DNA of 58,361 nucleotides from Macrostomum lignano (lineage: Eukaryota), in assembly GCA_002269645.1 (NCBI GenBank), contig NIVC01004143.1, positions 1 through 58,361 on the forward strand, read 5' to 3'. Within the stretch, counting starts at the first letter, position 1. Every line of letters starts with the position of its first letter. Of this stretch, positions 1-45,160 are shown piece by piece. The notes beneath the pieces are model-generated. The model was not told the origin of the DNA. It ran no database searches and worked only from the letters and a program-made list of their open reading frames with translations. Position numbers and translations under genes: made by a program.

Positions 1-630
1 AAACGAACGCAATGTGTTTGTGATCGAAGCGGAGTTTTTGGTCATGCTAAAATATGCTATTTTGTTATTGCTGAGAAAATTGCATTTTTGACGTCACCTG
101 TATTGATTAGTACAGTGAATTTGATGAAATAAATTGCATTACTCAGCTGTAATTCATGATTAGGTTTCATAGCTGCAATGGACCAAATTGATGCTTGTTG
201 GACCAAATTAAATACTGCTGTGCCAGCCTTGCTACCATAGCCAAAAATCAATTAGTTCAGTAAGCAAATCTTTGAATAAATTCAGTGTGTAAGCGCAAAT
301 AGGTTGGAAAAGTTATAAGGAACTTAATAGCTATACACCAGATTAGAGAGACCAATCGTTTCTCTGAAACTCGTACCTTGTAATTAACAAAATTACTGGT
401 AGGAAATCAATGTTTCGTATACAGTAGTTTCTGTCTGTACCCTTTTTGTTTCAAATTCAATGAAAAATTGCTGAGCAGTATCTAGCGGAGAAAATCGCCA
501 AACACCAGAAGCTCTTTGGACAGCCAAGGAGTAAATCAGGGTAGACAATAGAGAGGCAAAGTAGAGATTTACTTCAACTGAACAAAAACAAATCAAAGTG
601 CTCTAAAATTCTTAAGTTTTTATTCTTCAG

Positions 631-1460
631 GTCCGCAAAGTCGTCACGAAATCTCCACAGAGTTGGGCATCTGCAAATTCATATCTCCAACCAGTGATGT
701 CAAAGTCACATTTGAGTCGCCAGACGCATCCACGCACGTGTGCAGAGCATTCGACTCTAAAGGCCAGCAGCTGACAATTACTGCGCTGAAAAATCCAACA
801 TGCGATGTGGCTGACAATGTGCTGAGGTCCCAGTGGCTGTGCTCAAACTGCAGCAGCTCAGCCAATGTGTCTGTAATCTGTCAGGCTGATCAGCATCAAG
901 TTAGAAAGCTTATCAAAACACGCTGTCCCTACGTGTATGAGAGTAAGTTGTTTATCATTTATCTACGAAATAGTTATTGAACATTCTTTGAATAGTAAAA
1001 TGAAGCCTTCTATGATCAAACTTTCAGATTTTTGGCTGTTAGTCGTGTTATTGACCGAGATAATTGTATTAATCATATTGATATCCCTTGCAATCCTGAT
1101 CTACTACGAGAAGGTAAGCTTGACATGAAATCTTAATGTAAATAGTAAGATTGAGAGTCAAAGGTCTGTAATAAGAGGCAGTAGTCTTCATGTTATCTGC
1201 AAGGCATCAAACTGAGCAAGATTTTGTTTTAAAAAGAGCTATATATCGAACTGAATCCCATCCAAAATAAATTTAGAAAAAATTAATTCCGAAAAATTAT
1301 TTGATAACTTTGATAAACGGCCACACTTAAAAGTTCCAGAGTTGTGCTCATCCTCCTAACCAACCCAGCGATCCTCCAGCCGAGCTGAGAATGCAGCGAG
1401 CTGCTCAAAGCGTCTACGTGGATGACATGGTAGCCATGACAACCAATAGGACTGACAACG
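631..1460 (+). CDS. Receptor paralog D (partial): Cys-rich extracellular exon, TM exon and first cytoplasmic exon; upstream exons not found in the window
   Basis: Exon 631-942 (ttcttcag acceptor, 312 nt, phase 1-1, PQSRHEISTELGIC...WLCSNCSSSANVSVIC) closely matches the translation of gene B exon 5. A 31-nt GT-AG intron (943-973) follows. Exon 974-1113 encodes a hydrophobic helix (FWLLVVLLTEIIVLIILISLAILIYYEK) ending at gtaagc. An exon from 1340 (SCAHPPNQPSDPP...) follows; its 3' end is uncertain. Confidence 0.75.
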
Positions 1461-1744
1461 TTTCGCCGCCTCGGTCAGTTTACGTTAGCGATTGAGGAAG
1501 CGCTTGATTCTGTATTCGGCAATAACTATAAGTAACTATATGGAGCGTAACTATTTGGAGCTAACGTCGCCAGAGAATCATCGTGACCATTTTAAACACG
1601 AATATATTCTCGCTCCATCTCAATAACTTGATAACTCGCAAAAACATATCCAGGATTTCGAAATTATAAATTATAGAATGGTCATCAAATAAAACCAAGA
1701 GCTGTGAACTATGGTTGATTATAAATTATTATATTTTCATATTA

Positions 1745-1905: not shown

Positions 1906-2539
1906 CTAAGATATCAGGAGAAAAAATGAAAACACGAAGACCCCTAACTTGCTACTACTCGAACTATCAATAATTCTACCACTTAGAACATTCGATTTCA
2001 TCCTGATTCAGGTATTTTCCCTAAAATAGCCAGGTTTTTCACGTCATAATTGGTCATCTGAAACTCTGGTTGTTGAGGCTCGGTGACTGCATGGGCTTTG
2101 AGTTATATGTTTTGAGTTACATTTAACATCGTTCACTGATTTTCGCTACTCTTTCCTCCTAAGTTACATATGTGCATTAGTTAGCCAAATATTTAATTCA
2201 AGTCTCTCAGATTTTGAGAAATGTACAGTTAGGCACTTGAATTTAAAAATGTAATAATTTTATCATAAAAGTAGAAATGAGGATCTGGAGTCGTACTTTA
2301 AAACAGAAAAATCGAATGAAAAGAAATACAATGCTCAGACGAGTGTAGGCATTTCGAGTTTGAGTGAATTAATCGGAATGAGATGCTTACTAAAAGGTGT
2401 TTAAAAACAGCCCATAAAAGTACAGAGCTCTTAGATTACGAGTAATTTAAAGACTAAGTATTCCATTTTGCTGATTTTTATTTCACTTGCGCTGTGGGGG
2501 ATTCTTGAAAACGCAAAAGACAGCTACGAATTCGATTTA

Positions 2540-3446
2540 CAGCAGAACTACCAAGAGGGGGGGATCCCCCCCGACAACTTTTTTGCTGCGCCGGAACGGA
2601 GCAACGCAGCAGGCACACGAAATTCAAGAACACGGGCCAACTATTTGTTGCGCACCTTCTCAAACAAGAATCAAGTCGCCAGCCCTCTGGAACGTCGAGA
2701 TAATCAACGATTTTTCTAGGAAGTCCGATTTTTCCCATAAGCGCCAGTGTATTCAGTTCACCCCTGTGCGCCAATCAGCACTGCGCCTCAGTGCAGCCTT
2801 GCCAAGCCTCCAAATTTCACCAGCACGTCGACCACATGTGTCTGCATCAGCTCTAGCTTCGTTGGTCACTGGCCTTCACCCAGGCGGAGCTTCTAGACCT
2901 TCAACAGGTGGCACCAGGTGACTATGGACACCGAAAAAATGAATTTAAAAATTGTTTTAGCAACTTTTGTTAATTCTACTTGATCTTGAGTCCATATAGA
3001 AAAGTTGATAATTTTTTGTCATTTTTTCTCTTGGCGAAAATTCGGTTCAATTTACGGTTCAATTAACTAATTACGTCATCACGTCTCACGTTTGAGAGTC
3101 TAGCTGAAAATGACCAGGTGTTAATGTTAGCCCATTATTAATGCTTGATCAGCGAAACTAGAGAAATTCGCATCAGGGTGTCCATAGTCACCTGGTGCCA
3201 CCTGTTGAAGGTCTAGAAGCTCCGCCTGGGTGAAGGCCAGTGACCAACGAAGCCAGAGCTGATGCAGACGCATGTGATCGACGTGCTGGTGAAATTGCTG
3301 ATTGGCGCACAGGGGTGAACTGAATACACTAGCGCTTATGGGAAAAATCCGACCTTCTAGCAGAATCGTCGAATATCTCGACGTTCCGGACGGCTGGCGA
3401 CTTGATTATTGTTTGAGAAGGTGCGCAACAAAGAGTTGGCTTACTG
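2540..3446. mobile_element. Non-autonomous foldback DNA transposon, copy 1 (long inverted arms around an AT-rich spacer)
   Basis: Left arm 2540-2932 and right arm ~3143-3446 are inverted copies sharing the core CCTTCAACAGGTGGCACCAGGTGACTATGGACACC. Flanks are TTTA at 2536-2539 and TTAA at 3447-3450. Termini are CAGCAG.../...TTACTG. Confidence 0.75.
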
Positions 3447-3539
3447 TTAAAGCATTCATATGCACGTAGTTTAATAAATTACTAAATTTTATCATGCATG
3501 TAAATATTTCCTCAAAACATTGTAGATTTTAATTTAGAA

Positions 3540-6500
3540 TTACATGCTTCCAATTACAAAGCTTCTACGAGCTAGAACACAGTCACAATGTTGGTTAATA
3601 ACTATTCTTTCTTCAGTATCAAATACCATCCTTAATAATCATCAAATATTCCGTGACTTCACTTTCTGGCCGCTGTTCGTTAGAATTTGGTTCAGCTGTT
3701 GAAGGCATGAGCGAAGCGTAGGTGCAGCTGTTTCCTTCCTGAAGTATTATTATATATCGGATATCTGACTGAAGCTGAAGTAGTTTTAAACTAAATTTGT
3801 CTTACAAATCCGTAAATTTTTATTGGGAAAACTGCCACTATAAGTTGTATATAAGCGACTATTTTACTTCGGTAAATACTTGAGTTGCGATATTAAAAAA
3901 AATAATTGATGGCAGTTATGCATTACTAGCGTGTAAATAATTATATTTACCTGCTGTAGTCCCAAACTATGCCGAGCTGCTTCTTTTATTGAAAGCAATA
4001 CATGTAAAATCACTGTTTGTTACTTTTTTCAATACAAATGTCTTTTCATCTGATGCATCACTGTATACAGAGAATCGAAGAAAAATATTTACAACTCAAT
4101 CCTGTGTCTGATCTTTTTGACTTAGGATATTTAAAAATCTTTTTTTGACTTTGAACCATGGGGAAATTACTAGTTAATATGAATTTCAGACACTTTCGCA
4201 GACAGTTTAATTGAGCACGAAGATGCTTTCTCAATGGATTTTTTACTCTGACTGACCTGATAGTTGTCATTAGACTTTGGAAGTTCAACCATGCAAATAG
4301 CAGAATTTGGATGCAAATTTTCATGCCTCACCGCCACTCCGTTGTCAGGCGTTGGTGGTTCTTCATTTGAAACTTTCTCAGTTGAGTGTCTGGAAAAAGC
4401 AATTGAAACATTTTTTATGTAAGGGTGGAGTAATGCGTAGTAGGTTCCATTCATTGAAAGACTTATACAATGATACAATTATGTTTTAGCAATCCAATAA
4501 ATTTTATTTTCTCGCAGTATTCCAACAGCTTTAGAGCTGATAAATTAACACACATGGACATTGGTTCCGGTACAAGGCTCCCTGGAGGAGACTTTTCGAA
4601 CGAAACGTTTTCGAATATTTTCCGTCAATTTGTGGCCGAGTTCTTTGATGTCGCGCAAGTCCTTCCTTCACATTGCTGACACACGGAGAAATGCTTTATG
4701 TGTGAATTGAACTCAATTTGGAAGCGAAAAGTCAAAGAACAAAATCAAGGCTAAAAATTGTTGTTCAGATCTAAATGGGAACTTGACTGTGCTCTACGAA
4801 GAGGCTTCCCCAAAGGGGATAAATGTGGAAAAAGGCGATTTCCTGCGAACTTCTGGCTCTAAAATGGATGCGGTGGCAGATTGCGCCTGATTCTTTATCG
4901 AATCTTACGACTAGACCAAATGTGTTAATTTTTACATCCTCAACTTTATAGGCAACGTTGATGTGAATTCATGTAAATATTTTTTCTCGTGATAAATTTA
5001 TAAAAATTATTTTAATAGCTATTATAAATTTTATGCATGCAAGGTTTAATAGATTGACTCTAAAAACAGGTATTTTGGCTTGGATTAGCTGCCCACATCG
5101 AAATAGTTTGATTTACATGCAGGTACTGTCACACTAATTATAATTTCATTATATAGCTATATATCTCAATCCATATGCATGGCTAACAATTATATTCAAT
5201 CAGTGCCTGAATAAGACTAAAAGCGGTCGACCGACAAATACACGTAGCACGTAGAAGGATAGGGTACCTCGCTTCTCCCTTCTTTCTTAGAAACACTCAT
5301 AACAAATAGCTCAGTATCATTAGCTCGGTAGCTAAATCTAATAGCCATCAGTAACTATATGATAGCAAATTCTATTTAGACATGAAATCGCAAACGTGTT
5401 TGATTTCAGTCTAGTCCGAATAAAAGCTTCCTATTTTACGCAATATATCATTTTTAGCTGCCTGTTGATATTGCCTAATTAAAGATTCAATTTACTCGAG
5501 CAATAAACTTTAAGTTGTCTAACTTAGTGAATGAAAACCTAAGTTTTTTATTGGATTCTTTTAATAGCTCTTTTAATAGTTCTTAAAAAGCTACAAAACT
5601 GGTATATAGACAGTTTGACTCACACAAATACAAATACGTTCTGTATTTCTCAGCAAGGACTACTAGACTAGATGTTCCAGTGGTCCTTGTTTCTCAGAAG
5701 CTAGAAAATTGTTTCTTGACCAATAATCTTGTTGTTCATTGAACGACACATAAACAAGTCGTTCTAGCAAATTACTATATATATGTGTAGCATAAATTAC
5801 TCACCTTACAGTTGCTAGCTTTCGTTCAAGCGTTTGATGGCTTCCAATAGCCTGTTGGAAATATTTTAATATTTTGTTATTTAAATTAATAATTCTGTAC
5901 TTTAATTGCTGCGTAGGCGCATGGATTGTACATAAGGAAAGACACAAAAGATCAGAAAAGTTGCATATTAATACCATTTTTCTACAAGCAAATATCGCTC
6001 CTGCGACAACAGCTATTAACAGAATCGAGGAAACTGCCATCAATATGTATATGTAGAACTGAGTAAGTTCAGGTGAGGATGGCCTTTGAAGCTCTTTAGT
6101 TTCCTTAGCTGAAAAGTATAAATGAATTAATTTTTATGGGTACTGTAATGCCTAGCCAAAATGATAAAATGAATCAAGTCTGGTGTGTCTAATCTTAATG
6201 GACTAATTTCAATGAGAACTGGACAACTCACAAGCAACTGATAGATAGCCAGAGCTGACAACAACTCCACCAACACTGCACGCATAGACTCCATAATCTT
6301 CCTCATTCACAGAGTCGATTACATAGGTCTCATTTCCAGTTGCAAGTGTCCGGTTAGTGCTCAAGTGTATTAATTTGATACTTGCCAAACTATCAATGCA
6401 ACTCACATTGCATCTCACCTTGGCACTGGTATTCGAGCTTATATTAGACGGCGGTGCTATGTCAAAGGTAACTGAAAGAATAAATAAATGTATTTTATGG

Positions 6501-7413
6501 CTAATGAAAAAGAGTAAAAAGTATGTAATCTTAACTCACTATCGATCGAGATATACTTATAGGCCAAAATACTAAAAGCCATGCTCTCAATTGCGTTGGT
6601 TTTGTTGTTCCACGCAGGCTTGCGAAGCAGTACTGTTTTGGCCTGAATTTTTTTGAGGGAATTGCTTGGTATATAAGTGTGTTAAGTTATTAACACACCT
6701 TTACTGAATTATAGACTGATAAGCTCACCTCCTGGACACTGGAACAGTTCACTTGAATTGCAGTTGGCTTAGAAGATCCACAGAAAGTCCAATATTTCTT
6801 GTTAGTCTCAAATACTGAGCTCATATTTCTGGAGTTGCACTTTTCAGAACCAAATCCAATTGTTTCTGTTGTTGTCCAAACTTCAATTCTCTCTGCTAGC
6901 TGGCTTTCGCTTGTAATTGCTGCATTTTGGGGATACCACTTTACTTGCATATTAAAATTAAATATTATCATAAAATCAATAACCATAATATATGAATAGA
7001 TATACTCACGTGAGATAACAAACCCATCTGTCCAAACAGTACTTCTAAGCTGGACGGCCAACCAGTGATAGCCTTTGTCAGCGGCTGAGCCTTCGTCAGC
7101 TGATTTGAAGGCCCCGTCCAACTGACTTCCCCCAATCCCACAAATAAACGGGCCTTTAGTGTACTCTTTGAAACTCGATGACTGCCAGGTCTTTTCTCCT
7201 GCACCAGTAGTTACAAATTCAGTACCTAGTAGTAATTTAAAATATGTAATGCATGTAAGCATTCAAAACTGTGATAGAATTTATTATTGACTATTGAGAC
7301 ATTTACGAAAATTTCTGTTACTTACATTCAAATGCAGACTCCGCAAAATATTGGAGCAGGCAAGTTGCCATAAAAATGTAAATTAAAGCAGATATCAGTG
7401 CGGAATTAATCAT
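3540..7413 (-). CDS. Receptor paralog A: signal peptide + discoidin/F5-8C-like domain + Ig domain + TM + cytoplasmic tail with ITIM/ITSM-like tyrosine motifs (10 exons, 439 aa)
   Basis: GT-AG exons 7413-7326, 7225-7010, 6943-6729, 6642-6540, 6471-6232, 6108-5975, 5851-5805, 4389-4257, 3738-3627 and 3571-3540 join in compatible phases to 1320 nt with no internal stop. Signal peptide MINSALISALIYIFMATCLL. Discoidin-like motifs WQSSS, YHWLAVQL and KPAW. Ig hallmark C...DYGVYAC. TM YIYILMAVSSILLIAVVAGAIFAC. Tail contains TYASL and TEYLMI. Additional small tail exons cannot be excluded. Confidence 0.8.
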
Positions 7414-8476
7414 ACTCAATAAAAGTATCTTTAAAGCTTACGCTTGTAAGACTGCAATCGCTGAACTAAATTTCGTCACTCTGCAATGAACGTTAATGAT
7501 ATTGCTTTTCATTCGCGAATATTCAGAATATTTATACCAACCTGCAGCGCAGCTGACGCTCATTTCCTAGCCAAATTTGTTTTGGCAAAGCGTTTGAAAC
7601 CAACTAGTTTACATTATTAGTGTGCATTTGGACATTTTGGACACTTACCATAATCTGCTTGAAGGGCTATCATTAAATTGTAAATTCATCTTTGACTATT
7701 TAAAGAACCCTGTTTACCTCGTGTTCCGTTCGGTTTATAAATCTTTAGCTATTTACGTAGATCTTTCAGGTCTAGGTGGTTCTGTCTCGGCCGTTTCGAT
7801 TATATTCTGGAAGCCCCTCACTTCAATAATAATAGCTAATTTCACGAATTATTGTCTTTAACGATGCTGTAATATACTGGATCTCTGGTCAGTGAAATTC
7901 AGCGTTTTGTAAGCTCACCTCCGCTGTGTGCAACAATTTCAAAACTCCAGCTACAAGTAAACAATAGTTGCAATATTCTGGTAACAGCTGCATCATTATA
8001 TGGTCACGAAGCGATGTATCGCGTATGTGAGAAATCGCTTACCGAAAATTTTAAAATTGAAAAAGACCCCCTGTCGTGTGGCTGCTATATTCTCCGAGGC
8101 GCTGGACGAGAAGACGATCAGTAGTTAGCAGCCTAAAATAGTTAGAGTACGAACTAAATCTAGTGCACAATATGTTGACTTGGTTCCTGTTGAATCTGGT
8201 TTTAGGCGACGACAGATGCCATCCTGCAATCCAGCACAAAGACGTAAACTTTGACGGACCTATTTGATCATCAAATTGATGTGGTGCACCATTCAGTTAA
8301 AAACATTGTTATCAATCCTTTTAGCTTTGATGAATGATCATTGTGCAACCTACGAGTAATACCGATTTAAGCTGGGATCAGAACGACATAACGACAACAA
8401 ACGTCTAGCGTGCATTCAGAATAGAAATCGTTCGTAATCATTTTCTTCTCGGTGTTGAGCTGTGAGACACGACTTC

Positions 8477-9795
8477 CTGTCTCTGTCTCCATCCCTGTCC
8501 CCCTTGTCCCTGTCTCTGACCCATGGTTTTTTCCTGTCCTTGTTTCTGACCCATGTTCCTGTCCCTGTCTCTGACCCATGTTCCTGTCCCTGTCTCTGAC
8601 CCATGTTCCTGTCCCTGTCTCTGACCCATGTTCCTGTCCCTGTCTCTGACCCATGTCCCTGTTCCTGTCTCTGACCCATGTCTCTGTCCCCCTTGTCCCT
8701 GTCTCTGATCCATGTCTCTGTCCCCCTTGTCCCTGTCTCTGACCCATGTCCCTGTCCCCCTTGTCCCTGTCTGTGACCCATGGTTTTTTCCTGTCCTTGT
8801 TTCTGACCCATGTTCCTGTCCCTGTCTCTGACCCATGTTCCTGTCCCTGTCTCTGACCCATGTTCCTGTCCCTGTCTCTGACCCATGTTCCTGTCCCTGT
8901 CTCTGACCCATGTTCCTGTCCCTGTCTCTGACCCATGTCCCTGTTCCTGTCTCTGACCCATGTCTCTGTCCCCCTTGTCCCTGTCTCTGATCCATGTCTC
9001 TGTCCCCTTGTCCCTGTCTCTGACCCATGTCTCTGTCCCCCTTGTCCCTGTCTCTGACCCATGGTTTTTTCCTGTCCTTGTTTCTGACCAATGTTCCTGT
9101 CCCTGTCTCTGACCCATGTTCCTGTCCCTGTCTCTGACCCATGTCTCTGTCCCCCTTGTCCCTGTCTCTGACCCATGTCTCTGTCCCCCTTGTCCCTGTC
9201 TCTGATCCATGTCTCTGTCCCCCTTGTCCCTGTCTCTGACCCATGGTTTTTTCCTGTCCTTGTTTCTGACCAATGTTCCTGTCCCTGTCTCTGACCCATG
9301 TTCCTGTCCCTGTCTCTGACCCATGTCTCTGTCCCCCTTGTCCCTGTCTCTGATCCATGTCTCTGTCCCCCTTGTCCCTGTCTCTGATCCATGTCTCTGT
9401 CCCCCTTGTCCTTGTCTCTGATCCATGTCTCTGTCCCCCTTGTCCCTGTCTCTGATCCATGTCTCTGTCCCCCTTGTCCCTGTCTCTGACCCATGGTTTT
9501 TTCCTGTTCTTGTTTCTGACCAATGTTCCTGTCCCTGTCTCTGACCCATGTTCCTGTCCCTGTCTCTGACCCATGTCCCTGTTCCTGTCTCTGACCCATG
9601 TCCCTGTTCCTGTCTCTGACCCATGTCTCTGTCCCCCTTGTCCCTGTCTCTGATCCATGTCTCTGTCCCCCTTGTCCCTGTCTCTGATCCATGTCTCTGT
9701 CCCCTTTGTCCCTATCTCTGACCCATGGCTTTTTTCTGTCCCTGTCTATGACCCATGTCCTTGTTCGTGTTCCTATCCCTGACCCCATCTCTATC
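8477..9795. repeat. Complex minisatellite of ~25-34 bp variant units with core CCCTGTCTCTGACCCATG
   Basis: Direct reading of tandem units such as TTCCTGTCCCTGTCTCTGACCCATG interleaved with longer variants. It accounts for the repetitive GSETGTGTWVRDRD ORFs. Confidence 0.95.
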
Positions 9796-10503
9796 CCTGT
9801 CGGTGTCCCGACTTATGTCCCCAAAAGTCGATGTATGAAGACCTACATCGACCCAGGATCCTCTTCCAGACTGAATTCTAGTTTTAAACATGTATCTACC
9901 GGCATGTAACCTTGGGAAGCGCTTGAAATAAATATATGCATTTGTGCATTTATACTTACAATGTAGCACCTGAATTAATTTATTTGAAGATCATTCGATT
10001 GAATGCTAATTTTAGCAAGAATCCTAGCAAGAAAGTGTAAATTGTTTAAAACATACTCCCTAGTATGTTCCACTCGCATTGCTCATCTTTAAGTGGTTAG
10101 CGCGAATTTTTCTGTATTTTTTTTGGTTGTCTTTATGGAATCAAAGATGGGTTTTTGAGATGAGATGTTCTCACAATTTTAGTTAGGGAATAATCCCATA
10201 AATGTAGCGTTGATTGATAGATGAAATACATGTGTACATACAGGAAAACCAGCATGTATTCAAACTAACAAATTCAAACACGCAGAAATTCTTATGAATA
10301 TACTGTATACTTTCAAAAAATAACAAGAAAAAAACTCATGGAAAATTTTGAACAGTGCGTTAACGAATGAGTAGGCCGTTTTTAACACTTAGCCAATATA
10401 AACAAATATGGACAATTCACGTATCGGAAAAAAGTTGTTAAGGCGAAAATTTCTTCGAAGAAAGCATAAAAATGTGAGTCACAACAAGTTTTGCTATGAA
10501 TAC

Positions 10504-13500
10504 CTACATGGAGTGTTGATTACTTTCTAAAGATATGGAGTAATTTAGTACATGTAATTCTGTATGATTATACCTAGTAGTACTCCGTAGACGTGTCCAT
10601 GAAAACAGAACAATTATCATTCAGATTGCTGTTCAATACCATCGGAGATGATCTCCAAGTATTCGGTGGCATCGCTATTGACCCGACTGCTCTGCGACAA
10701 CTCCATCATCTGTTCGTCGGGGTTAACCGTATCATAGCAGCACTCGCTCGTTATCTGTCTCTGAAGTGGTGATTGACAAATTCAACAAGTAGTGGTAGCA
10801 ACGTTCGATTTTATGGCATACGACCGATGGCCACTAGAAATTGCCGTTGTTTTTGCTTAGAGAAATAATATAGACTTATTCAATTTACATAATTACTACT
10901 TGCTCGAGTACTAACGCGAGGAACATTCGGAAGAGATTATTTCAAGACTGTGACTCACGCACAGCAGTGAAAACAAATCGAGTTTTTTCGATTTGCTCCT
11001 ATTTGAATAACTTCTATATATGGTACGAGCTCGTAAGCCATGACCTCAAATGTCCTCGCGCTTAAAAATCTGTTCTGCTCAGAAACTAAACTCCTGGCTT
11101 AACTATCAACTTGGTTAGCTCAACTATCAAGCCAACTCGAAGCAAACACATGCTACGAGTTTCATGTGATTCATGTAGTTTCGTGTGATTTTCGTAATAT
11201 CGAAATGTAAGAAAGCGTCCATTAGGCGCTTTAAAAAGTCGAATTTTCGTCTCAAAAAATCATATTTTTAAGAGACAAATTGCGCTTTTAACAGTAGGAA
11301 TGCCAAGCCATTTTTCCGCCCGTCAAACAACCAAGGTGGGGATTTTCCTTTTTTCATATAGAATCCCTCCCTGACAATTTCTTTTGCTGCGCCAAAACGA
11401 AGCAACGCAGGCACACGAAATTCAAGAACACGGGCTAAGTTTTTGTTGCACGTACACCTTATCAAACAAGAACCAATTCTTCAGCCCTCTGAACCGTCGA
11501 GATATTCGACGATTCTGCCAGAAGGTCAGATTTTTCCCATAAGCGCTAGTGTATTCAGTACACCCCTGTGCGCCAATCAGCACTATGCCTTAGTGCAGCC
11601 TTGCCAAGTCTCCAAATTTCATCAGCACGTCGACCACATGCGTCTGCATCAGCTCTGGCTTCGTTGGTTACTGGCTTCTGGACCTACAGCAGGTGGCACC
11701 AGGTGACTATGGACACCCTTGTTGCGAATTTCTCTAGTTTCGCTGATCAAGCCTCAACTGCTGAGCATCCTCGGCGTAGATGTGCATAGCTTTGATATGA
11801 GGATATATTTCAGCGTTGAGAATCGTACTTTCGCAAACAACTATAGAAAGATAGATCAGCACAGGCCAATCATAACTGAGGCTTTTAAGAAAAGATAAAA
11901 AATGAAATGTTGTTATGGTTTCGCTCTTTTACTCAAAATATAAAAAGTCGCTTCTCCAATCATCCGCAGACTCACCCGGAAGAGTTCAGAACTATTGCTA
12001 TCCTCATTAACTTCTGCTTCCAGCACCGATATGCTGGGCTGGGTGACATCGGTTGTGGTTGCTGCCACGGCTTTCTGCTGAGGCGCATCGCAGTTCAAAG
12101 CGGCCATTGGATGAGAAGAGACCGCTGGGGGTTCATCTTTGTTGCTTTGAGGCTGGCTGCAGAACTGATGGTTTGTAAAAACAAAAATTAGCTCAAGGTA
12201 ATTGTTGCATCAATACCAATCTTGCTCTTTTGCTTGGAGCTTTGTACTATGCAATACTTACCTTCTTGCGAGCAAAGACGAATAAAGCGGATGCCAATAT
12301 TAACAAAATAAAAACAACTGTCAGGACTATTACCAGCGGCCAAGGTTCTAAAATAGTTTTTTTAACCGAAGATTCAAATCGTATTACTTGACGCCAATGT
12401 CTGTCCAGTATTGCCATTTACTTTTGCTAAAAAAACTTACTATTTTTTGGGCATTCTGTGCCAATAGTTGTTTTAGCTTGATGCCGATTAGCATCGCAGA
12501 TTACAGACACATTGGCTGAGCTGCTGCAGTTTGAGCACAGCCACTGGGACCTCAGCAAATTGTCAGCCACGTCGCAGGTTGGATTTTTCACGGCTCTAAT
12601 TGTCAGCTGCTGGCCTTTAGAGTCGAATGCTCTGCACAAGTGCTTGGATGCGTCTGGAGACTCAAAGGTGACTTTGACATCAGCTCTTGGAGTTGCTGCA
12701 TTGCAGATGCCCAACTCTGTGGAGATTTTGTATCGACTTTGCGGACCTGAAAGTACGAAGTCATTCTGATTTCTGATTTGTGTGCATCTACCAAACTGAA
12801 ATCCATTTCAAATCAGATCGAAAAATTAAATTTTTTTCATCTTAACTAGAAATATCTCAATGCTTATATGCCAACATGCCTTCTCATATTAGAGCAAGCA
12901 TACACAATTTAACTCACCCTCAAAGTCGATGCGATTAAGCCACATGTTCACAAAGTTCATGCACTGATGGTAGCTATTTGTCAGATTCGCAACGAACTTT
13001 CTAAGCAGCAACATGCGGACCTGAAAGTTTACAAAATTTTAGTAGTCACACTTTTAAGTGTCAACACTAATGTTCTAAATATAAAATCTATAAATCATTG
13101 TAAGTGACCCATCAAATTGCTGGAATGTACTTACTGTTCGGTCGCATTTTACAGTCAAGTGTTCTCCTTTATCTATTTTTGATTTTGTTTTACCGCAGTA
13201 GCTCCAAGCCGACGGTTTTGAATTGAAAACCGAACTGATTTGCCGAGAGCCGCAGTGCTCAGACCCGAGCTGGCTGCTCAGGTCCGACTGTGAGGCAAAG
13301 AGCTCAACGTCTGCTGCACGGAACTCTACTGAATATCCTGGTACATCTGAAATTTTTTTGATTCCATTTTTTCATGACATAGTAGACTTGGTGCCTTCGC
13401 AGAATATATATTCGCAAAAATACATAAATTTGGCAGCAGAAACTCCCTCACCTCTACTTTCGACAGTGACAGACCGAATTCTTTCACTTTGATTCAGCAA

Positions 13501-13835
13501 AAGGACAAACCAATGGTATCCGTCAACTGCAGAAGAGTTGCGATCTCCGGAGTGAATGAAGTCCCACTGTCCCGTCCTGATTTCTGATCGAGTGTAAAAG
13601 CACCTTGATGTACTAGTATAAGAGCTCGTATAGTGAGATGACTGCCATGAGCTGGCGATCGCTTTGCGCGTGACTTGGAGTCGGCCTGAAGCATCAAAAT
13701 TATTGCTGTTTTTTTTAAATGAAAAATTATCAAAAACATCTCAACTTATTTCTTTAACTTACACAGTCCCGAAGTCGCGGCAATCAGACTTTCAATTACC
13801 GATGCAACAAGCAGAACGCAGGCCAGAAGCTTCAT
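10504..13835 (-). CDS. Receptor paralog B: signal peptide + discoidin/F5-8C-like domain + Cys-rich (possibly Ig-like) domain + TM + tail with ITIM/ITSM-like motifs (9 exons, 461 aa)
   Basis: Exons 13835-13763, 13685-13452, 13346-13135, 13020-12918, 12746-12441, 12386-12262, 12164-11976, 10760-10640 and 10526-10504 sum to 1386 nt in compatible phases. Signal peptide MKLLACVLLVASVIESLIA. Motifs SSWQSS and YHWFVLLLNQSERIRSVTVESR. TM WPLVIVLTVVFILLILASALFVFARKK. Tail contains CYDTV and TEYLEI. The exon 6 acceptor (AAG) and the terminal exon are the least certain parts. Confidence 0.8.
11292..11760 (+). mobile_element. Single arm of the foldback transposon family, in an intron of gene B
   Basis: TTAA at 11288-11291 is followed by CAGTAGGAATGCCAAGCCATTTTTCC, nearly the same terminus as 15988. 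The body matches 2560-2932 and 16000-16430. No second arm was seen. Confidence 0.75.
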
Positions 13836-15855: not shown

Positions 15856-15987
15856 TTTCTAATTAGCTGCGTTGCTTATCGTGTAAATTGATAGCTCATT
15901 TTATTACAGATCTAATTTCTGTCGCTGTCTACTACCAAATATAGGGGCTGGCAGCTGGCGGCTGGCAGGTAAATACGAGCGTATTAA

Positions 15988-17275: not shown

Positions 17276-17594
17276 TTAATTATCTTTATTAACCGATACT
17301 GACCCTACTTTCAAATGTAACCATATGTATGAGTTTTAAGCACATAAAAATAACGAGACAAGTACAACCGATCAGTCTATGCTGGTGTGTTGCTCTGGCA
17401 CGAGTTAAAGCTGCATCGAAAGAGTTCTGGTTTGTTATAGTTTACTCGTATATTATTTTAGGCGATATGTGAAGAAGAGAAAAAATAAATACAAGAAGCC
17501 AGTTGATAAACATTTTCAACGTATCGCGAGATTACATCGCGTGTGTAAGCTTATTTTTTCGGTACCAATATAAAAACCTCAGGGCAGTTGGTGT

Positions 17595-18861
<1,267 letters not shown>

Positions 18862-19633
18862 CTCCGTCTTTCGCTATTGGCTTTTCTATCAATTCAACAG
18901 TCAGTGAAAATATGATCTGAATATGTAATACGCCGAATGACTTTAAGAACCATTTTATTGAAAATAAAAGCATCATACAATATCAAATAAGATAAAAAAT
19001 GGATAGCCTTTAAGAGCAGAGTAATAATTAATTGAATTTAGCCCGTTTAAAGTAATAAAAATACAATTTTAAACAAAAAATATATATAGCACATAAAACA
19101 TATTAGAGTTGATTTTCGATTTTGTTTTTATACGAGCCAGAAGAGATTTCAACTTCAGGCTTCAACTCCCTTCATAAGCTCCAGATTAACAAGTTGACAA
19201 TTATTTTTTCTAATTGTAGCAGATGCCTAAAAGGACAGAATGTACTGAAAATGGCGAAAAAAAGTAAAAATTTATCTTTAAAGCAGCGAACTATCTTACC
19301 ACAGCGATGGGCTCGGCCGAAGTTTCAACCTTCACAGGAGGTCTGAGCTGGCTCACCTCCGGTGTACTGCTGTCAGCCAGCTCTGCGGCAACCCATAAGC
19401 TGGACTGATCTTGGCTTGGTTTGCAATATCGCTGAAATGCAGTTTTGAAATTTGTAAAAAATGCTGACAAAAGGTGTTTAACACACAGGTATATTAATAC
19501 AAATAGGCCTTTAACAACTTACCTTCTTAATAAACGCTCCTGTAACTAAAAACATTGTTGCTGCCAAAAGTATAAAGAGTGGAAGAGCCAGGGCCTTGAA
19601 GAGCATTAAAATTGCTGAAAAATTGTGTAAAGC

Positions 19634-19792
19634 ATCTGGTTTGTGAATCGTCGTATTTGTGAAGCATCGGATTTGTGAATCATCGGATTTGTGAAGCATT
19701 GGATTTGTGAAGCATTGGATTTGTGAAGCATCGTATTTGTGAAGCATCGGATTTGTGGATCGTCTGGTTTGTGAAGCATCGGATTTGTGAAA
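19634..19792. repeat. 16-bp tandem repeat (GTGAAGCATCGGATTT), about 10 copies, in intron 5 of gene C
   Basis: Direct reading. Confidence 0.9.
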
Positions 19793-20840
19793 CAACAATC
19801 AAAACTTGTTTCTTTGATCTCATTTAATGCAGAGTGCTGTTGAAAACCTAAAAACGACACTCACTAAACTTAGGCATCCATGTCCGACACAGAGGCTGTT
19901 GGAAGGATGCAGATGCTATTGTCTGGTTATTCCATACGACAGAACAGTTCACTGTCAGCTTTGCAGGGTTGCCGCAGTTCTGACAGCTCCAAATCGACTT
20001 GATTGAATTTGCTCGAGCATCGCATACAGACTCGCCAAGCTTCTGCATCAGTGAGATTCTGTTGCCAAATCGATTCCAAAGTTTACAACTGTGCTTCGTT
20101 CTCGACGCTAAACTCGGCGATTCGAAAGTGAATTTCGAAAAATTACCATATTTTTCTTGACATTCTTCAGCGTCGGTTGAGATTTTTAGTCTAGCAGGGG
20201 CTTCTGAAATTGACCGTGATGCAATGAGAATTGCGAAAAAACTTCATTTATAACAGGAAGACTTACCAGTGACATCCACACGATTGAGCCATAGGCTACT
20301 GAAGCTCATGCATTGTCTTTGCAACTCGACCTCTTCTGCACTTTCTAAGTAGCATTGTTTTTACCTTGAGAATATGAATTATGCACTGGTTGTTAATTGG
20401 CAGGTATTCATCTTTTAAGTTGTCATTTGTGAATTGTTAAAATGATCTTACACTCCGCTGTCTGCAATAAACTGTTAGCATCTCGCCAAGCGACACAGTT
20501 GGCTTTGTAATCCCACAGAGGTTCCAGTCGTAGCCGGCAGCTCGTGTCCGATCAAATATCCAACTAATATTGCTTGTGTTGCAGCGGTCATTGCCGAAAT
20601 GAAAATTAGATTCACTTGTCCAAATTTCGATGTTTGCTGCTCGACTTTTGATGGCTTCTTCCATTCTTGAATTCCACGAATCTGTTCGATTTTTAGCTGC
20701 AATTTTTAACGTTAGCAAGCGAGCTTTGAAGAGTGCTACTATGCTATTTGCATAAATTATTTTGTGATTCTTTTAGACAGGGTCTTTAGACATACCTCTA
20801 CCTTCTATTGTAACCGAATTGATTAATTCTGTCTTATGTA

Positions 20841-22594
20841 CGAGGGATGTTCCATAAGTACTTATACTTTTGCATGCTGCTCAGGAACTACGCAACCAAT
20901 CATTGTAAGTTTTATGTCGCTGGAAAGCGGCTTTACTCATCTTTATTCTGTCGCCAAAATCATTTCGTTCTGTCAACTATGTCAAAAGTTACAACAAAAA
21001 ACGTAGTCAAAGGTCACCCATAGACTTACAAGAAATTTAAAGAGCAACAACTACAATGGCAAGCATGAAAACAGAGGCGCGTTGTTGATGACAGAAAGTT
21101 TGACTTCTTTGTCACTCATCCTCAGTCGGTACCGACACCTTCTCAACGTAGTTTCCACCGGAGTTGATGCACTTGGTCCACCTGTTAAAAATGCTTTTGA
21201 TGGCTTCTGCGTACAGCTGTCGGGGGATGACATACAGCAGAATTCTGCGGACTTCCTCCTCGATCTGGTTCCTGGTCTCGTACACGCGTCCTTTCAGATG
21301 GCGCTTCAACTCTGGAAATAAAGCAAAGTCTGCTGGTGCCAGGTCTGGAGAGTAAGGAGGGTGAGGTAGAAGATGGAGCTTCAGCTTGCTGATTGCCTCG
21401 ACTGTCTTTTGTGCTGTATGAGGCCTTGCATTGTCATGATGAAGAATGAAAGGTCTGGGATTTTCACGACGCTTGTTCTGGATGTCATGATGCAGCTTTG
21501 TTAGCGTTTCAACGTAGCGCTCAGAGTTTATTGTAGTGTTTGGCTCCAAAAACTCGACAGTTAGAGGACCATTGCAGTCGAAAAACAGAGACAGCATGAT
21601 CTTCTTTCCATGTGCGTCCCTTTGAGCTTTTACCGGAGGATCAGAGCCCTTCAGCATCCAGACCTGGGAATCACGTTTCGTTGGTGGATCAAAATGGGGA
21701 ATCCAGGTTTCATCTCCAGTGACTATCATTCGATGGAAGAGATCCCAACCACCGTATTCTTCCATCATCCGAATATTGGCCTGACAAATCTGCTGCCTCT
21801 GCAGTCTCAAGTCCGAGGTGAGTAGGCGTGGCACCCAACGAGCAGTCAGCTTGACAAAGTCCATGCGCGACAAGCAGCGATGCACAGTTGTGCTCGGCGT
21901 GTCCAGTCTATCTGCAATCTGTCGAATCGTTAGCCGACAATCTTCGTCCAGCAGATCAAGAATTCGATCGGTGAGAGCATCAGAGCCTGATGTGCAGGGG
22001 CGGCCCGACCTCGGCAAATCAGCAACATTGGTCCTTCCTGCTTCGAACTGCTCAACCCAGTTGTAGACGGTCATCCTGCTCACCGCATTAGCTCCATGAA
22101 TGTTGCATAAATCCGCATAAATCTCTGATCGCTTTTTTCCGAGTTTCCAGAGGGTAAAAATTGCAGCGCGCTGTCCTTCCCTTGAGTTCACATCCATGGT
22201 GATGCAGCAGCAGCCAAGGTGGTGAAACTTTACAAGATTAAGATGCTGTGATCTTAAGATTAAGATGCTGTGAAAGCTTAGGCCAGTATTTTCCATAGAC
22301 GAAAAGGGTGTGGCATTCGCTTATGAAGCAAAAAAGAATGCATTATGTAGAATCCGAAATAACTCTGCGTGCTGAACTTTGAAGTTTTGATTTTGAAAAT
22401 TTCTTGTAAGTCTATGGGTGACCTTTGACTACGTTTTTTGTTGTAACTTTTGACATAGTTGACAGAACGAAATGATTTTGGCGACAGATTAAAGATGAGT
22501 AAAGCCGCTTTCCAGCGACATAAAACTTAAAATGATTGGTTGCGTAGTTCCTGAGCAGCATGCAAAAGTATAAGTACTTATGGAACATCCCTCG
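20841..22594 (-). mobile_element. Mariner (DD34D) DNA transposon, 1754 bp, with 198-bp terminal inverted repeats and a TA duplication
   Basis: TIRs at 20841-21038 and 22397-22594 (two mismatches seen). TA at 20839-20840 and 22595-22596. Terminus CGAGGG. Confidence 0.95.
21112..22296 (-). CDS. Mariner transposase, apparently intact
   Basis: HTH region, WVPRLL linker, TGDETW, HHDNARPH and YSPDLAPADF. There are 34 residues between the second and third catalytic Asp. The true start may be the M of MDVNSRE (~22199). Confidence 0.95.
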   Translation of the reverse strand: MENTGLSFHSILILRSQHLNLVKFHHLGCCCITMDVNSREGQRAAIFTLWKLGKKRSEIYADLCNIHGANAVSRMTVYNWVEQFEAGRTNVADLPRSGRPCTSGSDALTDRILDLLDEDCRLTIRQIADRLDTPSTTVHRCLSRMDFVKLTARWVPRLLTSDLRLQRQQICQANIRMMEEYGGWDLFHRMIVTGDETWIPHFDPPTKRDSQVWMLKGSDPPVKAQRDAHGKKIMLSLFFDCNGPLTVEFLEPNTTINSERYVETLTKLHHDIQNKRRENPRPFILHHDNARPHTAQKTVEAISKLKLHLLPHPPYSPDLAPADFALFPELKRHLKGRVYETRNQIEEEVRRILLYVIPRQLYAEAIKSIFNRWTKCINSGGNYVEKVSVPTEDE

Positions 22595-23299
22595 TAGCTT
22601 GATGGCAAACCATAAGTATCCTTGATCAGCAAGCGACTTGTTCTCAAGTGTGTGGAAATACAGAAAGGGCAGCTTATCTTCATGTTGATTGCCCAATTTG
22701 AAGCACGCCGATCCCAGCTGGCTGGAGTAGTAGCTGCTTGATTGCCAAGAGTCAGCAATAGACGATCTGGTGATGCGAAGGCTGCCTAAAAAGTGTTTGA
22801 GGAACTGTTTTTAATCAAGGCGGGAGTCGCCGAAATTGAGCTTGCTTTTCGCTTGGGCTGGCACACCGGAGATGTCAAGATCGGTTTTGCTAATCGGAAA
22901 TTATCGAGAAATTTTGTGCAGATAGTAAGGTTTCTCCGCCTATCTTGCCAAGCTTGTGACTAAATAAAGTTTTGAAAAGGCAGAGCGTCTACTCTTTATT
23001 CAGTAGCTTGTTTGTGCAATGTCACTTAAATTTAACAGCCTAGCTATGGGGCTGAGGCACCCTTTTTCTCTCTTGCACTCGCTATATGCACACGAACTGG
23101 AATTTGGTTTTTCAAATTTTCCTGCAATCTTCAGTAATAAAATTCATTTATTTTAAACAATTTCTAGTATGGAGTCAGTATATGAAGCCGGTAAAACAAA
23201 ATGAAGATGCTACGATGCTACTCGTAATTTAACGGATATGATGTAGAAAGCTGAAAGATATTGTTGCATTTAATAAGCTAGTTTAAGAACTTTTTTTAT

Positions 23300-41952: not shown

Positions 41953-42091
41953 TTGCCCTGTTCTTCATTTTGACTGGATGCGCTCTGGCTAAAACTTTTT
42001 CACTTTATTAATTTGTATTATTTCGAAGCTTTTAAAATGTTAGCTAATTATTGTAGCGTCAGCCTAAATATGAGTTTCAGTTCTCTTTTTT

Positions 42092-45000: not shown

Positions 45001-45160
45001 CCCAGAGTCCCAGATTGTGTACTTCCTTCCAGATCCCAATCCCAGAGTCCCAAATTGTGTAATTCCTTCCAGATCCCAATTCTAGAGTCCCAAATTGTGT
45101 ACTTCCTTCCAGATCCCAATCCCAGAGTCCCAGATTGTGTACTTCCTTCCAGATCCTAAT
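42092..45160. repeat. 40/38-bp minisatellite (CCCAGAGTCCCAAATTGTGTACTTCCTTCCAGATCCCAAT), ~3 kb, just downstream of the EMC2 stop
   Basis: Direct reading. It accounts for the many overlapping GLWDWDLEG and SQSQSP ORFs. Confidence 0.97.

What the first reader, a model, noticed from the sequence alone, without database searches (positions are those of the whole stretch)
3627..10760. Conserved tail exon with paired ITIM-like and ITSM-like tyrosine motifs in genes A and B
Seen: exon 3738-3627 encodes EGNSCTYASL...EVTEYLMIIKD and exon 10760-10640 encodes RQITSECCYDTV...DATEYLEIISD. Both are phase 0 to 1, with tyrosines 24 and 25 residues apart, while the rest of the tails is unalignable. Established: TxYxx[I/V] is the ITSM consensus, and ITIM-ITSM pairs about 23-25 residues apart (PD-1, PECAM-1) engage the tandem SH2 domains of SHP-1/SHP-2. 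Inference: these are inhibitory receptors signalling through an SHP2/Corkscrew-type phosphatase. The first motif deviates from the strict ITIM consensus at the -2 position.
Basis: partly seen in the sequence, partly recalled or inferred. Interest (0 to 1): 0.82.

Follow-up and report, generated by a model that had tools for sequence, protein, structure and literature searches.

The report
Flatworm receptor tails with paired tyrosine motifs
Two neighbouring genes of the flatworm Macrostomum lignano, and a distant third paralog, encode membrane receptors whose last coding exon carries a conserved pair of tyrosine motifs like the inhibitory ITIM/ITSM tails of vertebrate immune receptors; the sequence pattern is real, but the signalling function is untested.

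Summary
The two peptides, their cag acceptors and the tyrosine spacings (24 and 25) are as described. The window is Macrostomum lignano DNA. Genes A and B belong to a family found almost only in this species. They are type I membrane proteins with a signal peptide, a discoidin/CBM32-like sandwich domain, a second sandwich domain, a TM helix and a disordered tail.

The motif pair is not chance. It occurs only twice in all six frames of the window. A divergent third paralog (A0A1I8H6B9) ends ...CSYLSV...TVYLEIVADAN*. The tail exon (38-40% identity) is at least as conserved as the folded ectodomain (27-35%).

Corrections:
- The exon is most likely the terminal coding exon (...KDGI*, ...SDGIEQQSE*), not phase 0 to 1. 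The only model using that "donor" is a chimeric B-A fusion.
- The exon follows one or two other cytoplasmic exons, not the TM exon.
- The earlier tail shares a short SNxxEPP motif.
- Other paralogs (Z, C, BOX15_Mlig021334g1) lack the pair.

The distal motif fits ITSM (TxYxx[IV]). The proximal motif is CxYxx[LV] and fails ITIM at -2. Recruitment of a tandem-SH2 phosphatase (SHP2/Corkscrew type) is plausible but untested, and YxxPhi sorting is the main rival. It is a putative new variant of a known signalling module in a new phylum.

The parts
3619..7413 (-). Gene A, my 9-exon model, phase-consistent throughout. Exons: e1 7413-7326 (signal peptide MINSALISALIYIFMATCLLQYFAESAFE), e2 7225-7010, e3 6943-6729, e4 6642-6540 (N-terminal sandwich domain), e5 6471-6232 (Ig-like), e6 6108-5975 (TM), e7 5851-5805, e8 4389-4332, e9 3738-3619 (tail plus stop).
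   Evidence: Three-frame reading with canonical GT/AG sites and matching phases. UniRef model A0A1I8G0L0 covers e2, e5-e8. e3 and e4 are homologous to gene B exons.
3619..3738 (-). Gene A tail exon, the terminal coding exon: EGNSCTYASLMPSTAEPNSNEQRPESEVTEYLMIIKDGI*. Stop TGA at 3621-3619. ATTAAA poly(A)-like signals at 3533 and 3475.
   Evidence: It is in frame with e8, whose donor is GCG|GTGAGG at phase 0.
3709..3726 (-). Gene A proximal motif CTYASL (ITIM-like, Cys at -2, Tyr codon 3720-3718).
   Evidence: It shares YASL with the BTLA ITIM IVYASL (PMC8631942).
3637..3654 (-). Gene A distal motif TEYLMI (fits the ITSM consensus TxYxx[VI]).
5975..6108 (-). Gene A TM exon (…FYIYILMAVSSILLIAVVAGAIFACRKM). 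No charged residue in the TM. Ends in phase 0.
4332..4389 (-). Gene A cytoplasmic exon e8 (R)HSTEKVSNEEPPTPDNGVA, carrying the shared SNxxEPP motif. It is preceded by e7 at 5851-5805 (AIGSHQTLERKLATV).
10617..13835 (-). Gene B, 8 exons, matching UniRef A0A1I8J1S8. Exons: e1 13835-13763, e2 13685-13453, e3 13347-13132, e4 about 13017-12916, e5 about 12744-12441, e6 TM 12347-12262, e7 12164-11976, e8 10754(10760)-10617.
   Evidence: Exact mapping of P0002 onto the window. Splice sites read.
10617..10760 (-). Gene B tail exon, the terminal coding exon: (RQ)ITSECCYDTVNPDEQMMELSQSSRVNSDATEYLEIISDGIEQQSE*. Tandem acceptors at 10760 and 10754. Stop at 10619-10617.
10725..10742 (-). Gene B proximal motif CCYDTV (ITIM-like, Cys at -2).
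10650..10667 (-). Gene B distal motif TEYLEI (fits the ITSM consensus).
11976..12347 (-). Gene B TM exon 12347-12262 (PWPLVIVLTVVFILLILASALFVFARKK, uncharged) and cytoplasmic exon e7 12164-11976 (FCSQPQSNKDEPPAV…SELFR).
582..1495 (+). Gene Z (paralog, 5' part off-window). It has a Cys-rich domain exon, a TM exon 1028-1113 with Glu in the TM (FWLLVVLLTEIIVL…), and a terminal exon 1340-1495: SCAHPPNQPSDPPAELRMQRAAQSVYVDDMVAMTTNRTDNVSPPRSVYVSD*. It lacks the CxYxxPhi/TxYLxI pair.
   Evidence: (P0004).
19300..22810 (-). Gene C (paralog). TM exon 19614-19523, then a cytoplasmic exon at about 19432-19300 (RYCKPSQDQ…AEPIAV). No Tyr-pair exon was found. A mariner transposase sits in an intron.

Best explanation
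Genes A and B are tandem paralogs of a Macrostomum-restricted family of type I transmembrane receptors. Each has a signal peptide, a roughly 180-aa discoidin/CBM32-like beta-sandwich, a second beta-sandwich (Ig-like in A, Cys-rich in B), one TM helix and a disordered 75-110-aa tail.

The flagged exons are the last coding exons. They encode a conserved bipartite tyrosine module, C-x-Y-x-x-[LV]-x-P ... S-[ED]-x-T-x-Y-L-x-I-[IV]-x-D, with the tyrosines 24-26 residues apart.

Most likely mechanism (inferred, not shown): ligand-driven clustering lets a Src-family kinase phosphorylate both tyrosines. The doubly phosphorylated tail then docks bivalently onto a tandem-SH2 effector, most plausibly the SHP2/Corkscrew-type phosphatase, which dampens local tyrosine-kinase signalling.

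My sub-confidences:
- real, constrained, terminal coding exon: about 0.9
- phosphotyrosine/SH2 docking module: about 0.6
- SHP2-type phosphatase specifically: about 0.4
For: Sequence and structure:
- Translations and splice sites are confirmed.
- Exon chains for A and B are fully phase-consistent.
- An existing model of B includes the exon as its terminal exon.
- AF2 predicts a confident N-terminal sandwich, a TM helix at 312-339 and a disordered tail.
- Foldseek matches are to CBM32, galactose oxidase N-domain and DDR1 discoidin, and to Fab/PD-L1-like two-sandwich folds.

Conservation:
- The strict motif pair occurs only at these two places in the six-frame window.
- The third paralog P0008 (E 8e-12 to the family profile) ends ...CSYLSVDPNAEPADNSDRNSDTASDCTVYLEIVADAN*, and P0017 carries the same tail.
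- Used as a query, the P0008 tail picks the A and B exons as the top 2 of about 5,800 windows.
- Tail-exon identity is 38-40%, against 27-35% for the folded N-terminal domain.
- There are synonymous differences inside TEYLxII.
- Invariant columns are C, Y, P, S, T, Y, L and I. My inference: conservation of the -2 residues (Cys, Thr) is expected for SHP/SAP-type SH2 recognition, not for AP-2 YxxPhi binding.

Context from papers:
- Tandem ITIM/ITSM motifs bind the tandem SH2 of SHP1/2 bivalently, and the BTLA ITIM is IVYASL (PMC8631942).
- An invertebrate ITIM (Draper-II) binds Corkscrew (PMC8092387).
- M. lignano transcripts annotated as PTPN11 homologues exist (PMC5946080).
Against: - There is no experimental or RNA-level evidence here. 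No transcript-derived protein for A or B is in the searched collections.
- The gene A junction e8 to e9 is my model only.
- The proximal motif fails the ITIM consensus at -2 (Cys).
- Both motifs are also generic YxxPhi sorting signals.
- Several paralogs lack the pair (Z, C, P0007).
- In the P0003 locus the proximal half is deleted, and the annotated acceptor puts TEYLDI out of frame.
- I did not verify the presence and domain structure of an M. lignano SHP2 orthologue by sequence.
Confidence: 0.5

Rival explanations
1. The two motifs are tyrosine-based sorting signals (YxxPhi). They bind the mu subunits of AP-2 or other AP complexes and drive endocytosis or lysosomal targeting of the receptor, with no phosphotyrosine signalling.
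For: All copies fit Yxx[LVI]: YASL, YDTV, YLSV, YLMI, YLEI. The distal motif lies 6-13 residues from the C-terminus in an acidic context, as in many sorting signals (my knowledge). The tail is disordered.
Against: AP binding does not explain three things (inference). These are the invariant Cys and Thr at -2, the invariant Leu at +1 of the distal motif, and the fixed 24-26-residue spacing across paralogs that are otherwise only about 38% identical. One YxxPhi would suffice for sorting.
Confidence: 0.25
2. One reading: the exons are internal (phase 0 to 1) and are followed by further coding exons, so the motifs are not at the C-terminus.
For: GATG|GTATT is identical in A and B. GTATT donors exist in this gene (TM exon of A). 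One database model (A0A1I8J690) uses this donor.
Against: - That model is a topologically implausible fusion into gene A's Ig exon that skips A's N-terminal domain.
- Stops follow 2 and 8 codons after the conserved Asp.
- Nothing downstream is conserved between A and B at protein or DNA level.
- The P0008 model ends 5 residues after the motif.
- The P0003 locus has no GT at that position and runs to a stop.
Confidence: 0.08
3. The pair is an activating, ITAM-like or hemITAM-like module that recruits a Syk/Shark-type tandem-SH2 kinase rather than a phosphatase.
For: There are two YxxL/I/V motifs in one tail. Syk/Shark-type kinases and ITAM receptors exist in invertebrates (PMC9546547; PMC8092387).
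Against: The ITAM consensus needs 6-9 (up to 12) residues between the two Yxx[LI] motifs (PMC9546547). Here 20-22 residues intervene. The distal motif has the ITSM-defining Thr at -2.
Confidence: 0.07
4. Chance resemblance or a non-functional relic: the motifs are neutral leftovers in fast-evolving, possibly unexpressed genes.
For: Short motifs are common: 778 Yxx[LIV] and 26 TxYxx[IV] occur in the six-frame window. No transcript-derived proteins for A or B were found. Some paralogs have lost the pair.
Against: The pair occurs only in the two homologous exons. It is conserved in a third divergent lineage. The exon is more conserved than the ectodomain. The ORFs are intact over 8-9 exons with canonical splice sites.
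Confidence: 0.05

Closest known systems
Vertebrate tandem ITIM-ITSM inhibitory receptors (PD-1, BTLA, PECAM-1)
   Same: They are type I receptors with a disordered tail carrying a proximal Yxx[LV] motif and a distal TxYxx[IV] motif about 23-26 residues apart near the C-terminus. Gene A's CTYASL / TEYLMI resembles the BTLA ITIM IVYASL (PMC8631942). It also resembles the ITSMs TEYATI (PD-1) and TEYASI (BTLA); neither attribution was read from a paper here: TEYATI was a term that returned PD-1 reviews which I did not read, and TEYASI is from my memory only, with no occurrence in the library. This arrangement binds the tandem SH2 of SHP1/2 bivalently.
   Different: There is no homology of the ectodomains or tails, so the resemblance is convergent short motifs. 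Position -2 of the proximal motif is Cys, not S/I/V/L. The animals belong to a different phylum with no lymphocytes. Binding and function are untested.
Drosophila Draper-II / Corkscrew
   Same: It is an invertebrate receptor isoform whose ITIM recruits the SHP2 orthologue Corkscrew to terminate signalling (PMC8092387). This shows that the ITIM-SHP2 logic operates outside vertebrates.
   Different: Draper is an EGF-repeat engulfment receptor conserved across animals. Its ITIM arises by alternative splicing and is single, not a tandem with an ITSM. It is not homologous to the present family.
Clustered invertebrate recognition-receptor families with ITIM/ITAM tails (Hydractinia Alr, Botryllus fester family)
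   Same: These are tandem arrays of fast-diverging, lineage-restricted type I receptors. Only some members carry ITIM or ITAM motifs, and the genome encodes SHP homologues (PMC9546547; PMC12582321, listed).
   Different: They have different ectodomain folds (V-set Ig/Fn3-like versus a discoidin-like sandwich plus a second sandwich) and belong to different phyla. Their role in allorecognition is genetically established, whereas nothing is known about the function of the Macrostomum family.
Paired inhibitory/activating receptor families (KIR, LILR, SIRP, CD300)
   Same: Within one gene cluster, members with ITIM-type tails have uncharged TMs. Members that have lost the tail motifs have an ionisable TM residue. 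In this family those residues are Glu in Z, Lys in P0003, Lys in C and His in P0007. The rule for the vertebrate families is from my own knowledge.
   Different: The pattern rests on 3 versus 4 genes. No adaptor partner (DAP12/FcRgamma-like) is known in flatworms. The residues could equally be incidental.

Membership tests
ITSM (immunoreceptor tyrosine-based switch motif) | Sequence TxYxx[V/I] in the cytoplasmic tail of a membrane receptor | tested here: met
   TEYLMI (A), TEYLEI (B), TVYLEI (P0008, P0017), and TEYLDI in the P0003 locus. A TM helix and a cytoplasmic tail are predicted.
ITSM (immunoreceptor tyrosine-based switch motif) | Phosphorylation-dependent binding of SH2 proteins (SHP2 C-SH2, SAP family) | not testable with these tools
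   Needs biochemistry.
ITIM (immunoreceptor tyrosine-based inhibitory motif) | [S/I/V/L] at position -2 of xYxx[I/V/L] (definition as in PMC9546547) | tested here: not met
   Cys is at -2 in all three lineages: CTYASL, CCYDTV, CSYLSV. Cys is isosteric with the allowed Ser, but it is outside the consensus.
ITIM (immunoreceptor tyrosine-based inhibitory motif) | [I/V/L] at +3 of the tyrosine | tested here: met
   L, V, V.
Tandem ITIM/ITSM module that engages the tandem SH2 of SHP1/2 | Two motifs in one tail at a spacing comparable to PD-1, BTLA and PECAM-1 (about 23-25 residues between tyrosines) | tested here: met
Spacings are 24 (A), 25 (B) and 26 (P0008). Bivalent binding is documented in PMC8631942.
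Tandem ITIM/ITSM module that engages the tandem SH2 of SHP1/2 | The host encodes an SHP2/Corkscrew-type phosphatase with two SH2 domains | not tested
   Only indirect evidence: M. lignano transcripts annotated as homologues of human PTPN11 are listed in PMC5946080.
ITAM | Yxx[I/L]-x(6-9)-Yxx[L/I] (PMC9546547) | tested here: not met
   20-22 residues lie between the two four-residue motifs.
YxxPhi tyrosine-based sorting signal | Y-x-x-bulky hydrophobic residue in a cytoplasmic tail | tested here: met
   All motifs fit. Binding to AP complexes is not testable here.
Immunoglobulin superfamily (gene A second ectodomain) | Pfam Ig-family match above the gathering threshold | tested here: inconclusive
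   Ig_2 E=2.9e-4, 21.4 bits, against a cut-off of 27. Ig_3 and ig are also below cut-off. The exon is phase 1-1 with a C...YxC pattern, as is typical of Ig exons.
Galactose-binding-domain-like fold (discoidin / F5/8 type C / CBM32) for the N-terminal domain | Sequence or structural match to the fold | tested here: inconclusive
   No Pfam match. The AF2 domain has pLDDT 80-93. Foldseek matches: CBM32 2xqx TMt 0.55, rmsd 4.4 over 147 columns, E 8e-3; galactose oxidase and DDR1 discoidin at E about 1e-3 to 5e-3.

The most novel reading that the evidence does not exclude
The cluster is a flatworm paired inhibitory/activating receptor family that evolved convergently with KIR, LILR and SIRP. The ancestral members (A, B, P0008) keep an uncharged TM and a terminal exon with a CxYxxPhi + TxYLxI phosphatase-docking tandem. 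Derived members have lost that exon and acquired an ionisable TM residue that could pair with a signalling adaptor.

The losses take different forms:
- P0003 has the proximal half deleted, and its distal TEYLDI is shifted out of frame by a 5-nt acceptor choice.
- Z has an earlier stop.
- C has no tail exon.
Probability: 0.15. Interest if true: 0.8.

Novelty: new variant of a known kind. Interest (0 to 1): 0.5.

Why it matters
Inhibitory receptors that signal through ITIM/ITSM tandems and SHP phosphatases are central to vertebrate immune regulation. Outside vertebrates they are documented only sporadically (Draper-II in flies, Alr in Hydractinia, the fester family in Botryllus).

My literature searches found no such receptor described in flatworms. 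A conserved tandem module in a lineage-specific, tandemly duplicated receptor family would have two uses:
- It would give a testable entry point into cell-surface recognition and negative signalling in Platyhelminthes. M. lignano is a regeneration and stem-cell model with transgenesis (my own knowledge).
- It would add a case of convergent assembly of the same short-motif logic on an unrelated ectodomain.

As it stands this is a sequence-based prediction.

Tried and rejected
- A tail-only profile (A5) searched against the 5.8-billion-protein index returned 1 candidate and no hit. The word prefilter is too coarse for a 45-column profile, so this is uninformative.
- Metagenome scans with the tail pattern and with an N-terminal-domain pattern gave no confirmed relatives.
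- A genomic look-up of P0008 found nothing on record, so its exon structure could not be checked.
- The first AF2 run with 4 sequences gave pLDDT 39 and was unusable. My spliced gene A draft was not accepted by the representative search.
- Pfam gave nothing for the N-terminal or Cys-rich domains.
- No third tail exon was found in the window for gene C.
- A possible decayed tail exon downstream of gene Z's stop (1591-1692 +, FKHEYILAPSQ*LDNSQKHIQDFEIINYRMVIK*) scores 45 against tail A. The window background tops out at about 40, and it scores only 17-19 against B and P0008. I rejected it as unproven.
- No conserved exon was found downstream of the tail exons.
- No canonical AATAAA or ATTAAA was found within 540 nt downstream of B's stop.
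- Literature searches for M. lignano plus ITIM, and for flatworm SHP2/Syk, gave nothing specific.
- P0014, an unnamed 1,015-aa protein with repeated TM/tyrosine-rich tails, matched only the TM and juxtamembrane part of the profile. I disregarded it as compositional.

Full report
**1. Observation**

- Both stretches are preceded by a cag acceptor and begin in phase 0.
- The tyrosines are at exon residues 7 and 31 in A and 9 and 34 in B, so they are 24 and 25 residues apart.
- In a translated search of the whole window, each exon is the other's best non-self hit (36% over 36 aa, E about 0.007). No third copy appears.
- The pattern Yxx[LIV]...TxYxx[IV], without intervening stops, occurs exactly twice in the 116,718 residues of the six-frame translation. 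Both occurrences are these exons. The single motifs are common: 778 Yxx[LIV] and 26 TxYxx[IV].
- At the DNA level, conservation peaks over TEYLxIIxDGI with synonymous differences (GAATAT/GAATAC, ATTATT/ATCATC). This indicates selection on the protein.

**2. Organism and genes**

The window is eukaryotic, with microsatellites, transposons and short exons.

A search with a spliced draft of gene A returned one protein, Macrostomum lignano A0A1I8G0L0. It is built from this very locus. A draft of gene B returned A0A1I8J1S8, which maps exactly to the window. It also returned the paralog BOX15_Mlig021334g1 and two models of a + strand paralog at the window start, which I call gene Z.

By reading all frames and splice phases I derived complete models.
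- Gene A has 9 exons (7413 to 3619) and gene B has 8 exons (13835 to 10617).
- In both, the order is signal peptide, three exons of an N-terminal domain, a second ectodomain exon, a TM exon ending in phase 0, cytoplasmic exons, then the tail exon.
- A third paralog, gene C (22810 to about 19300), has a mariner transposase in an intron.

**3. Exon structure: corrections**

- The tail exons are not spliced directly to the TM exons.
  - In B the chain is TM (…FVFARKK) to e7 (FCSQPQSNKDEPPAV…SELFR) to the tail.
  - In A the chain is TM (…FACRKM) to AIGSHQTLERKLATV to (R)HSTEKVSNEEPPTPDNGVA to the tail.
  - All junctions are in frame.
- The claimed phase-1 donor (G|GTATT) is most likely coding sequence. 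Read-through gives …KDGI* in A and …SDGIEQQSE* in B.
- The database model of B ends exactly there. It uses a tandem acceptor 6 nt downstream (ELFR|ITSECC).
- The only model that uses the donor, A0A1I8J690, jumps from …EIISD into gene A's Ig exon and skips A's N-terminal domain. It is a chimeric B-A prediction.
- Nothing downstream of the two exons is conserved between A and B at protein or DNA level.
- The membrane-proximal tail is not wholly unalignable. A short SNxx[ED]PP-type motif recurs.

**4. Conservation across the family**

An exhaustive profile search of 1.84 billion representative proteins found only 17 hits. All named hits are M. lignano. One orphan comes from a metagenome. The family is therefore lineage-restricted in the available data.

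The divergent member A0A1I8H6B9 (P0008, E 8e-12) ends …SCEPECSYLSVDPNAEPADNSDRNSDTASDCTVYLEIVADAN*. This has the same Cys-x-Tyr-x-x-Val, the same Thr-x-Tyr-Leu-x-Ile, a spacing of 26, and a terminal position. A0A1I8JLC6 carries the same tail.
- The four-sequence tail alignment has invariant C, Y, P, S, T, Y, L and I.
- Tail-exon identity is 38-40% in all three pairings, against 27-35% for the folded N-terminal domain.
- When the P0008 tail is slid against all six-frame windows, the A and B exons are its two best hits.

The pair is not universal.
- Gene Z ends QSVYVDD…RSVYVSD* in a single terminal exon.
- Gene C has no such exon.
- P0007 ends …SEYENSEYKLENATGIYIL*.
- In the genomic locus of BOX15_Mlig021334g1 (L001), the proximal half is deleted. 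Two acceptors 5 nt apart give either the annotated KA* or an in-frame SRRLNGDVTEYLDIVSIGVVRQPK*.

**5. What the proteins are**

Pfam recognises nothing in the N-terminal or Cys-rich domains. It gives only sub-threshold Ig hits for gene A's phase 1-1 exon.

With a 16-sequence alignment, AlphaFold2 gives three features:
- a confident N-terminal beta-sandwich (pLDDT 80-93)
- a TM helix at residues 312-339
- a disordered tail (pLDDT about 30)

Foldseek matches are weak.
- They point to the galactose-binding-domain-like fold: CBM32, the galactose oxidase N-domain and DDR1 discoidin.
- They also point to two-sandwich, Fab/PD-L1-like arrangements.

**6. Mechanism**

Shown: the architecture, the position of the motifs in a disordered C-terminal tail, and their conservation.

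Inferred: phosphorylation of both tyrosines and bivalent docking of a tandem-SH2 effector.

The arguments for an SH2 reading over plain YxxPhi sorting are the invariant -2 residues (Cys, Thr), the invariant +1 Leu of the distal motif, and the fixed spacing. AP-2 binding would not require any of these.

The distal motif meets the ITSM consensus. The proximal motif fails ITIM only at -2, where Cys is isosteric with the permitted Ser.

Supporting context from papers:
- Tandem ITIM/ITSM motifs bind the tandem SH2 domains of SHP1/2 in a bivalent, parallel mode. At least 32 human receptors have such tandems, and the BTLA ITIM is IVYASL (PMC8631942).
- The fly Draper-II ITIM recruits Corkscrew (PMC8092387).
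- M. lignano transcripts annotated as PTPN11 homologues exist (PMC5946080).

None of this tests binding.

**7. Comparison and novelty**

This is not homologous to any vertebrate ITIM receptor. It is a convergent use of the same short-motif logic on a new ectodomain in a new phylum.

The nearest parallels are clustered, lineage-specific invertebrate receptor families in which some members carry ITIM or ITAM motifs. Examples are Hydractinia Alr (PMC9546547) and the Botryllus fester family (PMC12582321, listed). I found no paper on such motifs in M. lignano.

I rate it a new variant of a known kind. It is of moderate interest and entirely predictive.

**8. The most novel reading not excluded**

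The three pair-bearing members have uncharged TMs. The pair-lacking members each carry an ionisable TM residue:
- Z: Glu
- BOX15_Mlig021334g1: Lys
- C: Lys
- P0007: His

Together with the out-of-frame TEYLDI relic, this resembles how activating KIR- or SIRP-type receptors derive from inhibitory ones. The sample is tiny (3 versus 4), so I give this reading a probability of 0.15.

Noticed in passing
Window TM exons: A 6108-5975(-), B 12347-12262(-), Z 1028-1113(+), C 19614-19523(-); also P0003, P0007, P0008: Members with the Tyr-pair tail (A, B, P0008) have uncharged TM helices. Members without it have an ionisable TM residue: Z Glu, P0003 Lys, C Lys near the outer edge, P0007 His. This is reminiscent of paired inhibitory/activating receptor families. 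The split is 3 versus 4 with complete separation.
   Followed up: partly
L001:11973-12134 (NCBI GCA_002269645.1, NIVC01003065.1): In the paralog BOX15_Mlig021334g1 the intron before the tail is only about 85 nt and the proximal CxYxxPhi half is missing. Tandem acceptors 5 nt apart (tcgcag|AGCAG|AAGG) give either the annotated KA* or an in-frame SRRLNGDVTEYLDIVSIGVVRQPK*.
   Followed up: partly
Window 10640(-) joined to 6471(-): UniRef A0A1I8J690 (598 aa) is a chimeric gene model that fuses gene B's tail (…EIISD) to gene A's Ig exon. UniRef A0A1I8G0L0 (gene A) lacks the signal-peptide exon and exons e3 and e4, and stops before the tail exon. A0A1I8JLC6 and A0A1I8G181 are also fused or read-through models.
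   Followed up: yes
Window 1340-1495(+): Gene Z's terminal exon has its own pair of tyrosines 22 residues apart in a repeated SVYV[DS]D context (QSVYVDD … RSVYVSD*). It is neither YxxPhi nor ITIM/ITSM, and its meaning is unknown.
   Followed up: no
Window 1591-1692(+): Downstream of gene Z's stop, one frame reads FKHEYILAPSQ*LDNSQKHIQDFEIINYRMVIK*. It weakly resembles tail exon A (score 45 against a background of about 40) but not B or P0008. It may be a decayed tail exon, but this is unproven.
   Followed up: partly
Window 22320-21115(-): An intact-looking 402-aa Mos1/mariner-type transposase ORF (HTH_48, Transposase_1, DDE_3) lies inside an intron of gene C.
   Followed up: partly
Window 2435-2918(+), 3405-3130(-), 11362-11786(+), 15945-16315(+), 17168-16956(-): These are five copies of an interspersed repeat, which translates as …SRQP.GTSRYSTILPEGRIFPISASVFS.PLCANQ…. 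One copy sits just downstream of tail exon A and one sits in the intron upstream of tail exon B.
   Followed up: no
Window 8370-9812, 17473-18982, 38000-40880, 42067-45214, 46241-47474: There are long microsatellite and minisatellite arrays with strong strand composition skew. One separates gene B from gene A and one lies downstream of gene C.
   Followed up: no
Window 32499-36190(+): A Pao/BEL-type LTR retrotransposon gag-pol region (DUF1759, Peptidase_A17, RVT_1, DUF5641), read as two overlapping ORFs.
   Followed up: partly
Window 40101-41836(+) and 58335-56645(-): Flanking housekeeping genes: EMC2 (TPR_EMC2) exons, the first fused in frame to a minisatellite-derived repeat, and the C-terminal exons of a dynein heavy chain (AAA_lid_11, Dynein_C).
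   Followed up: partly
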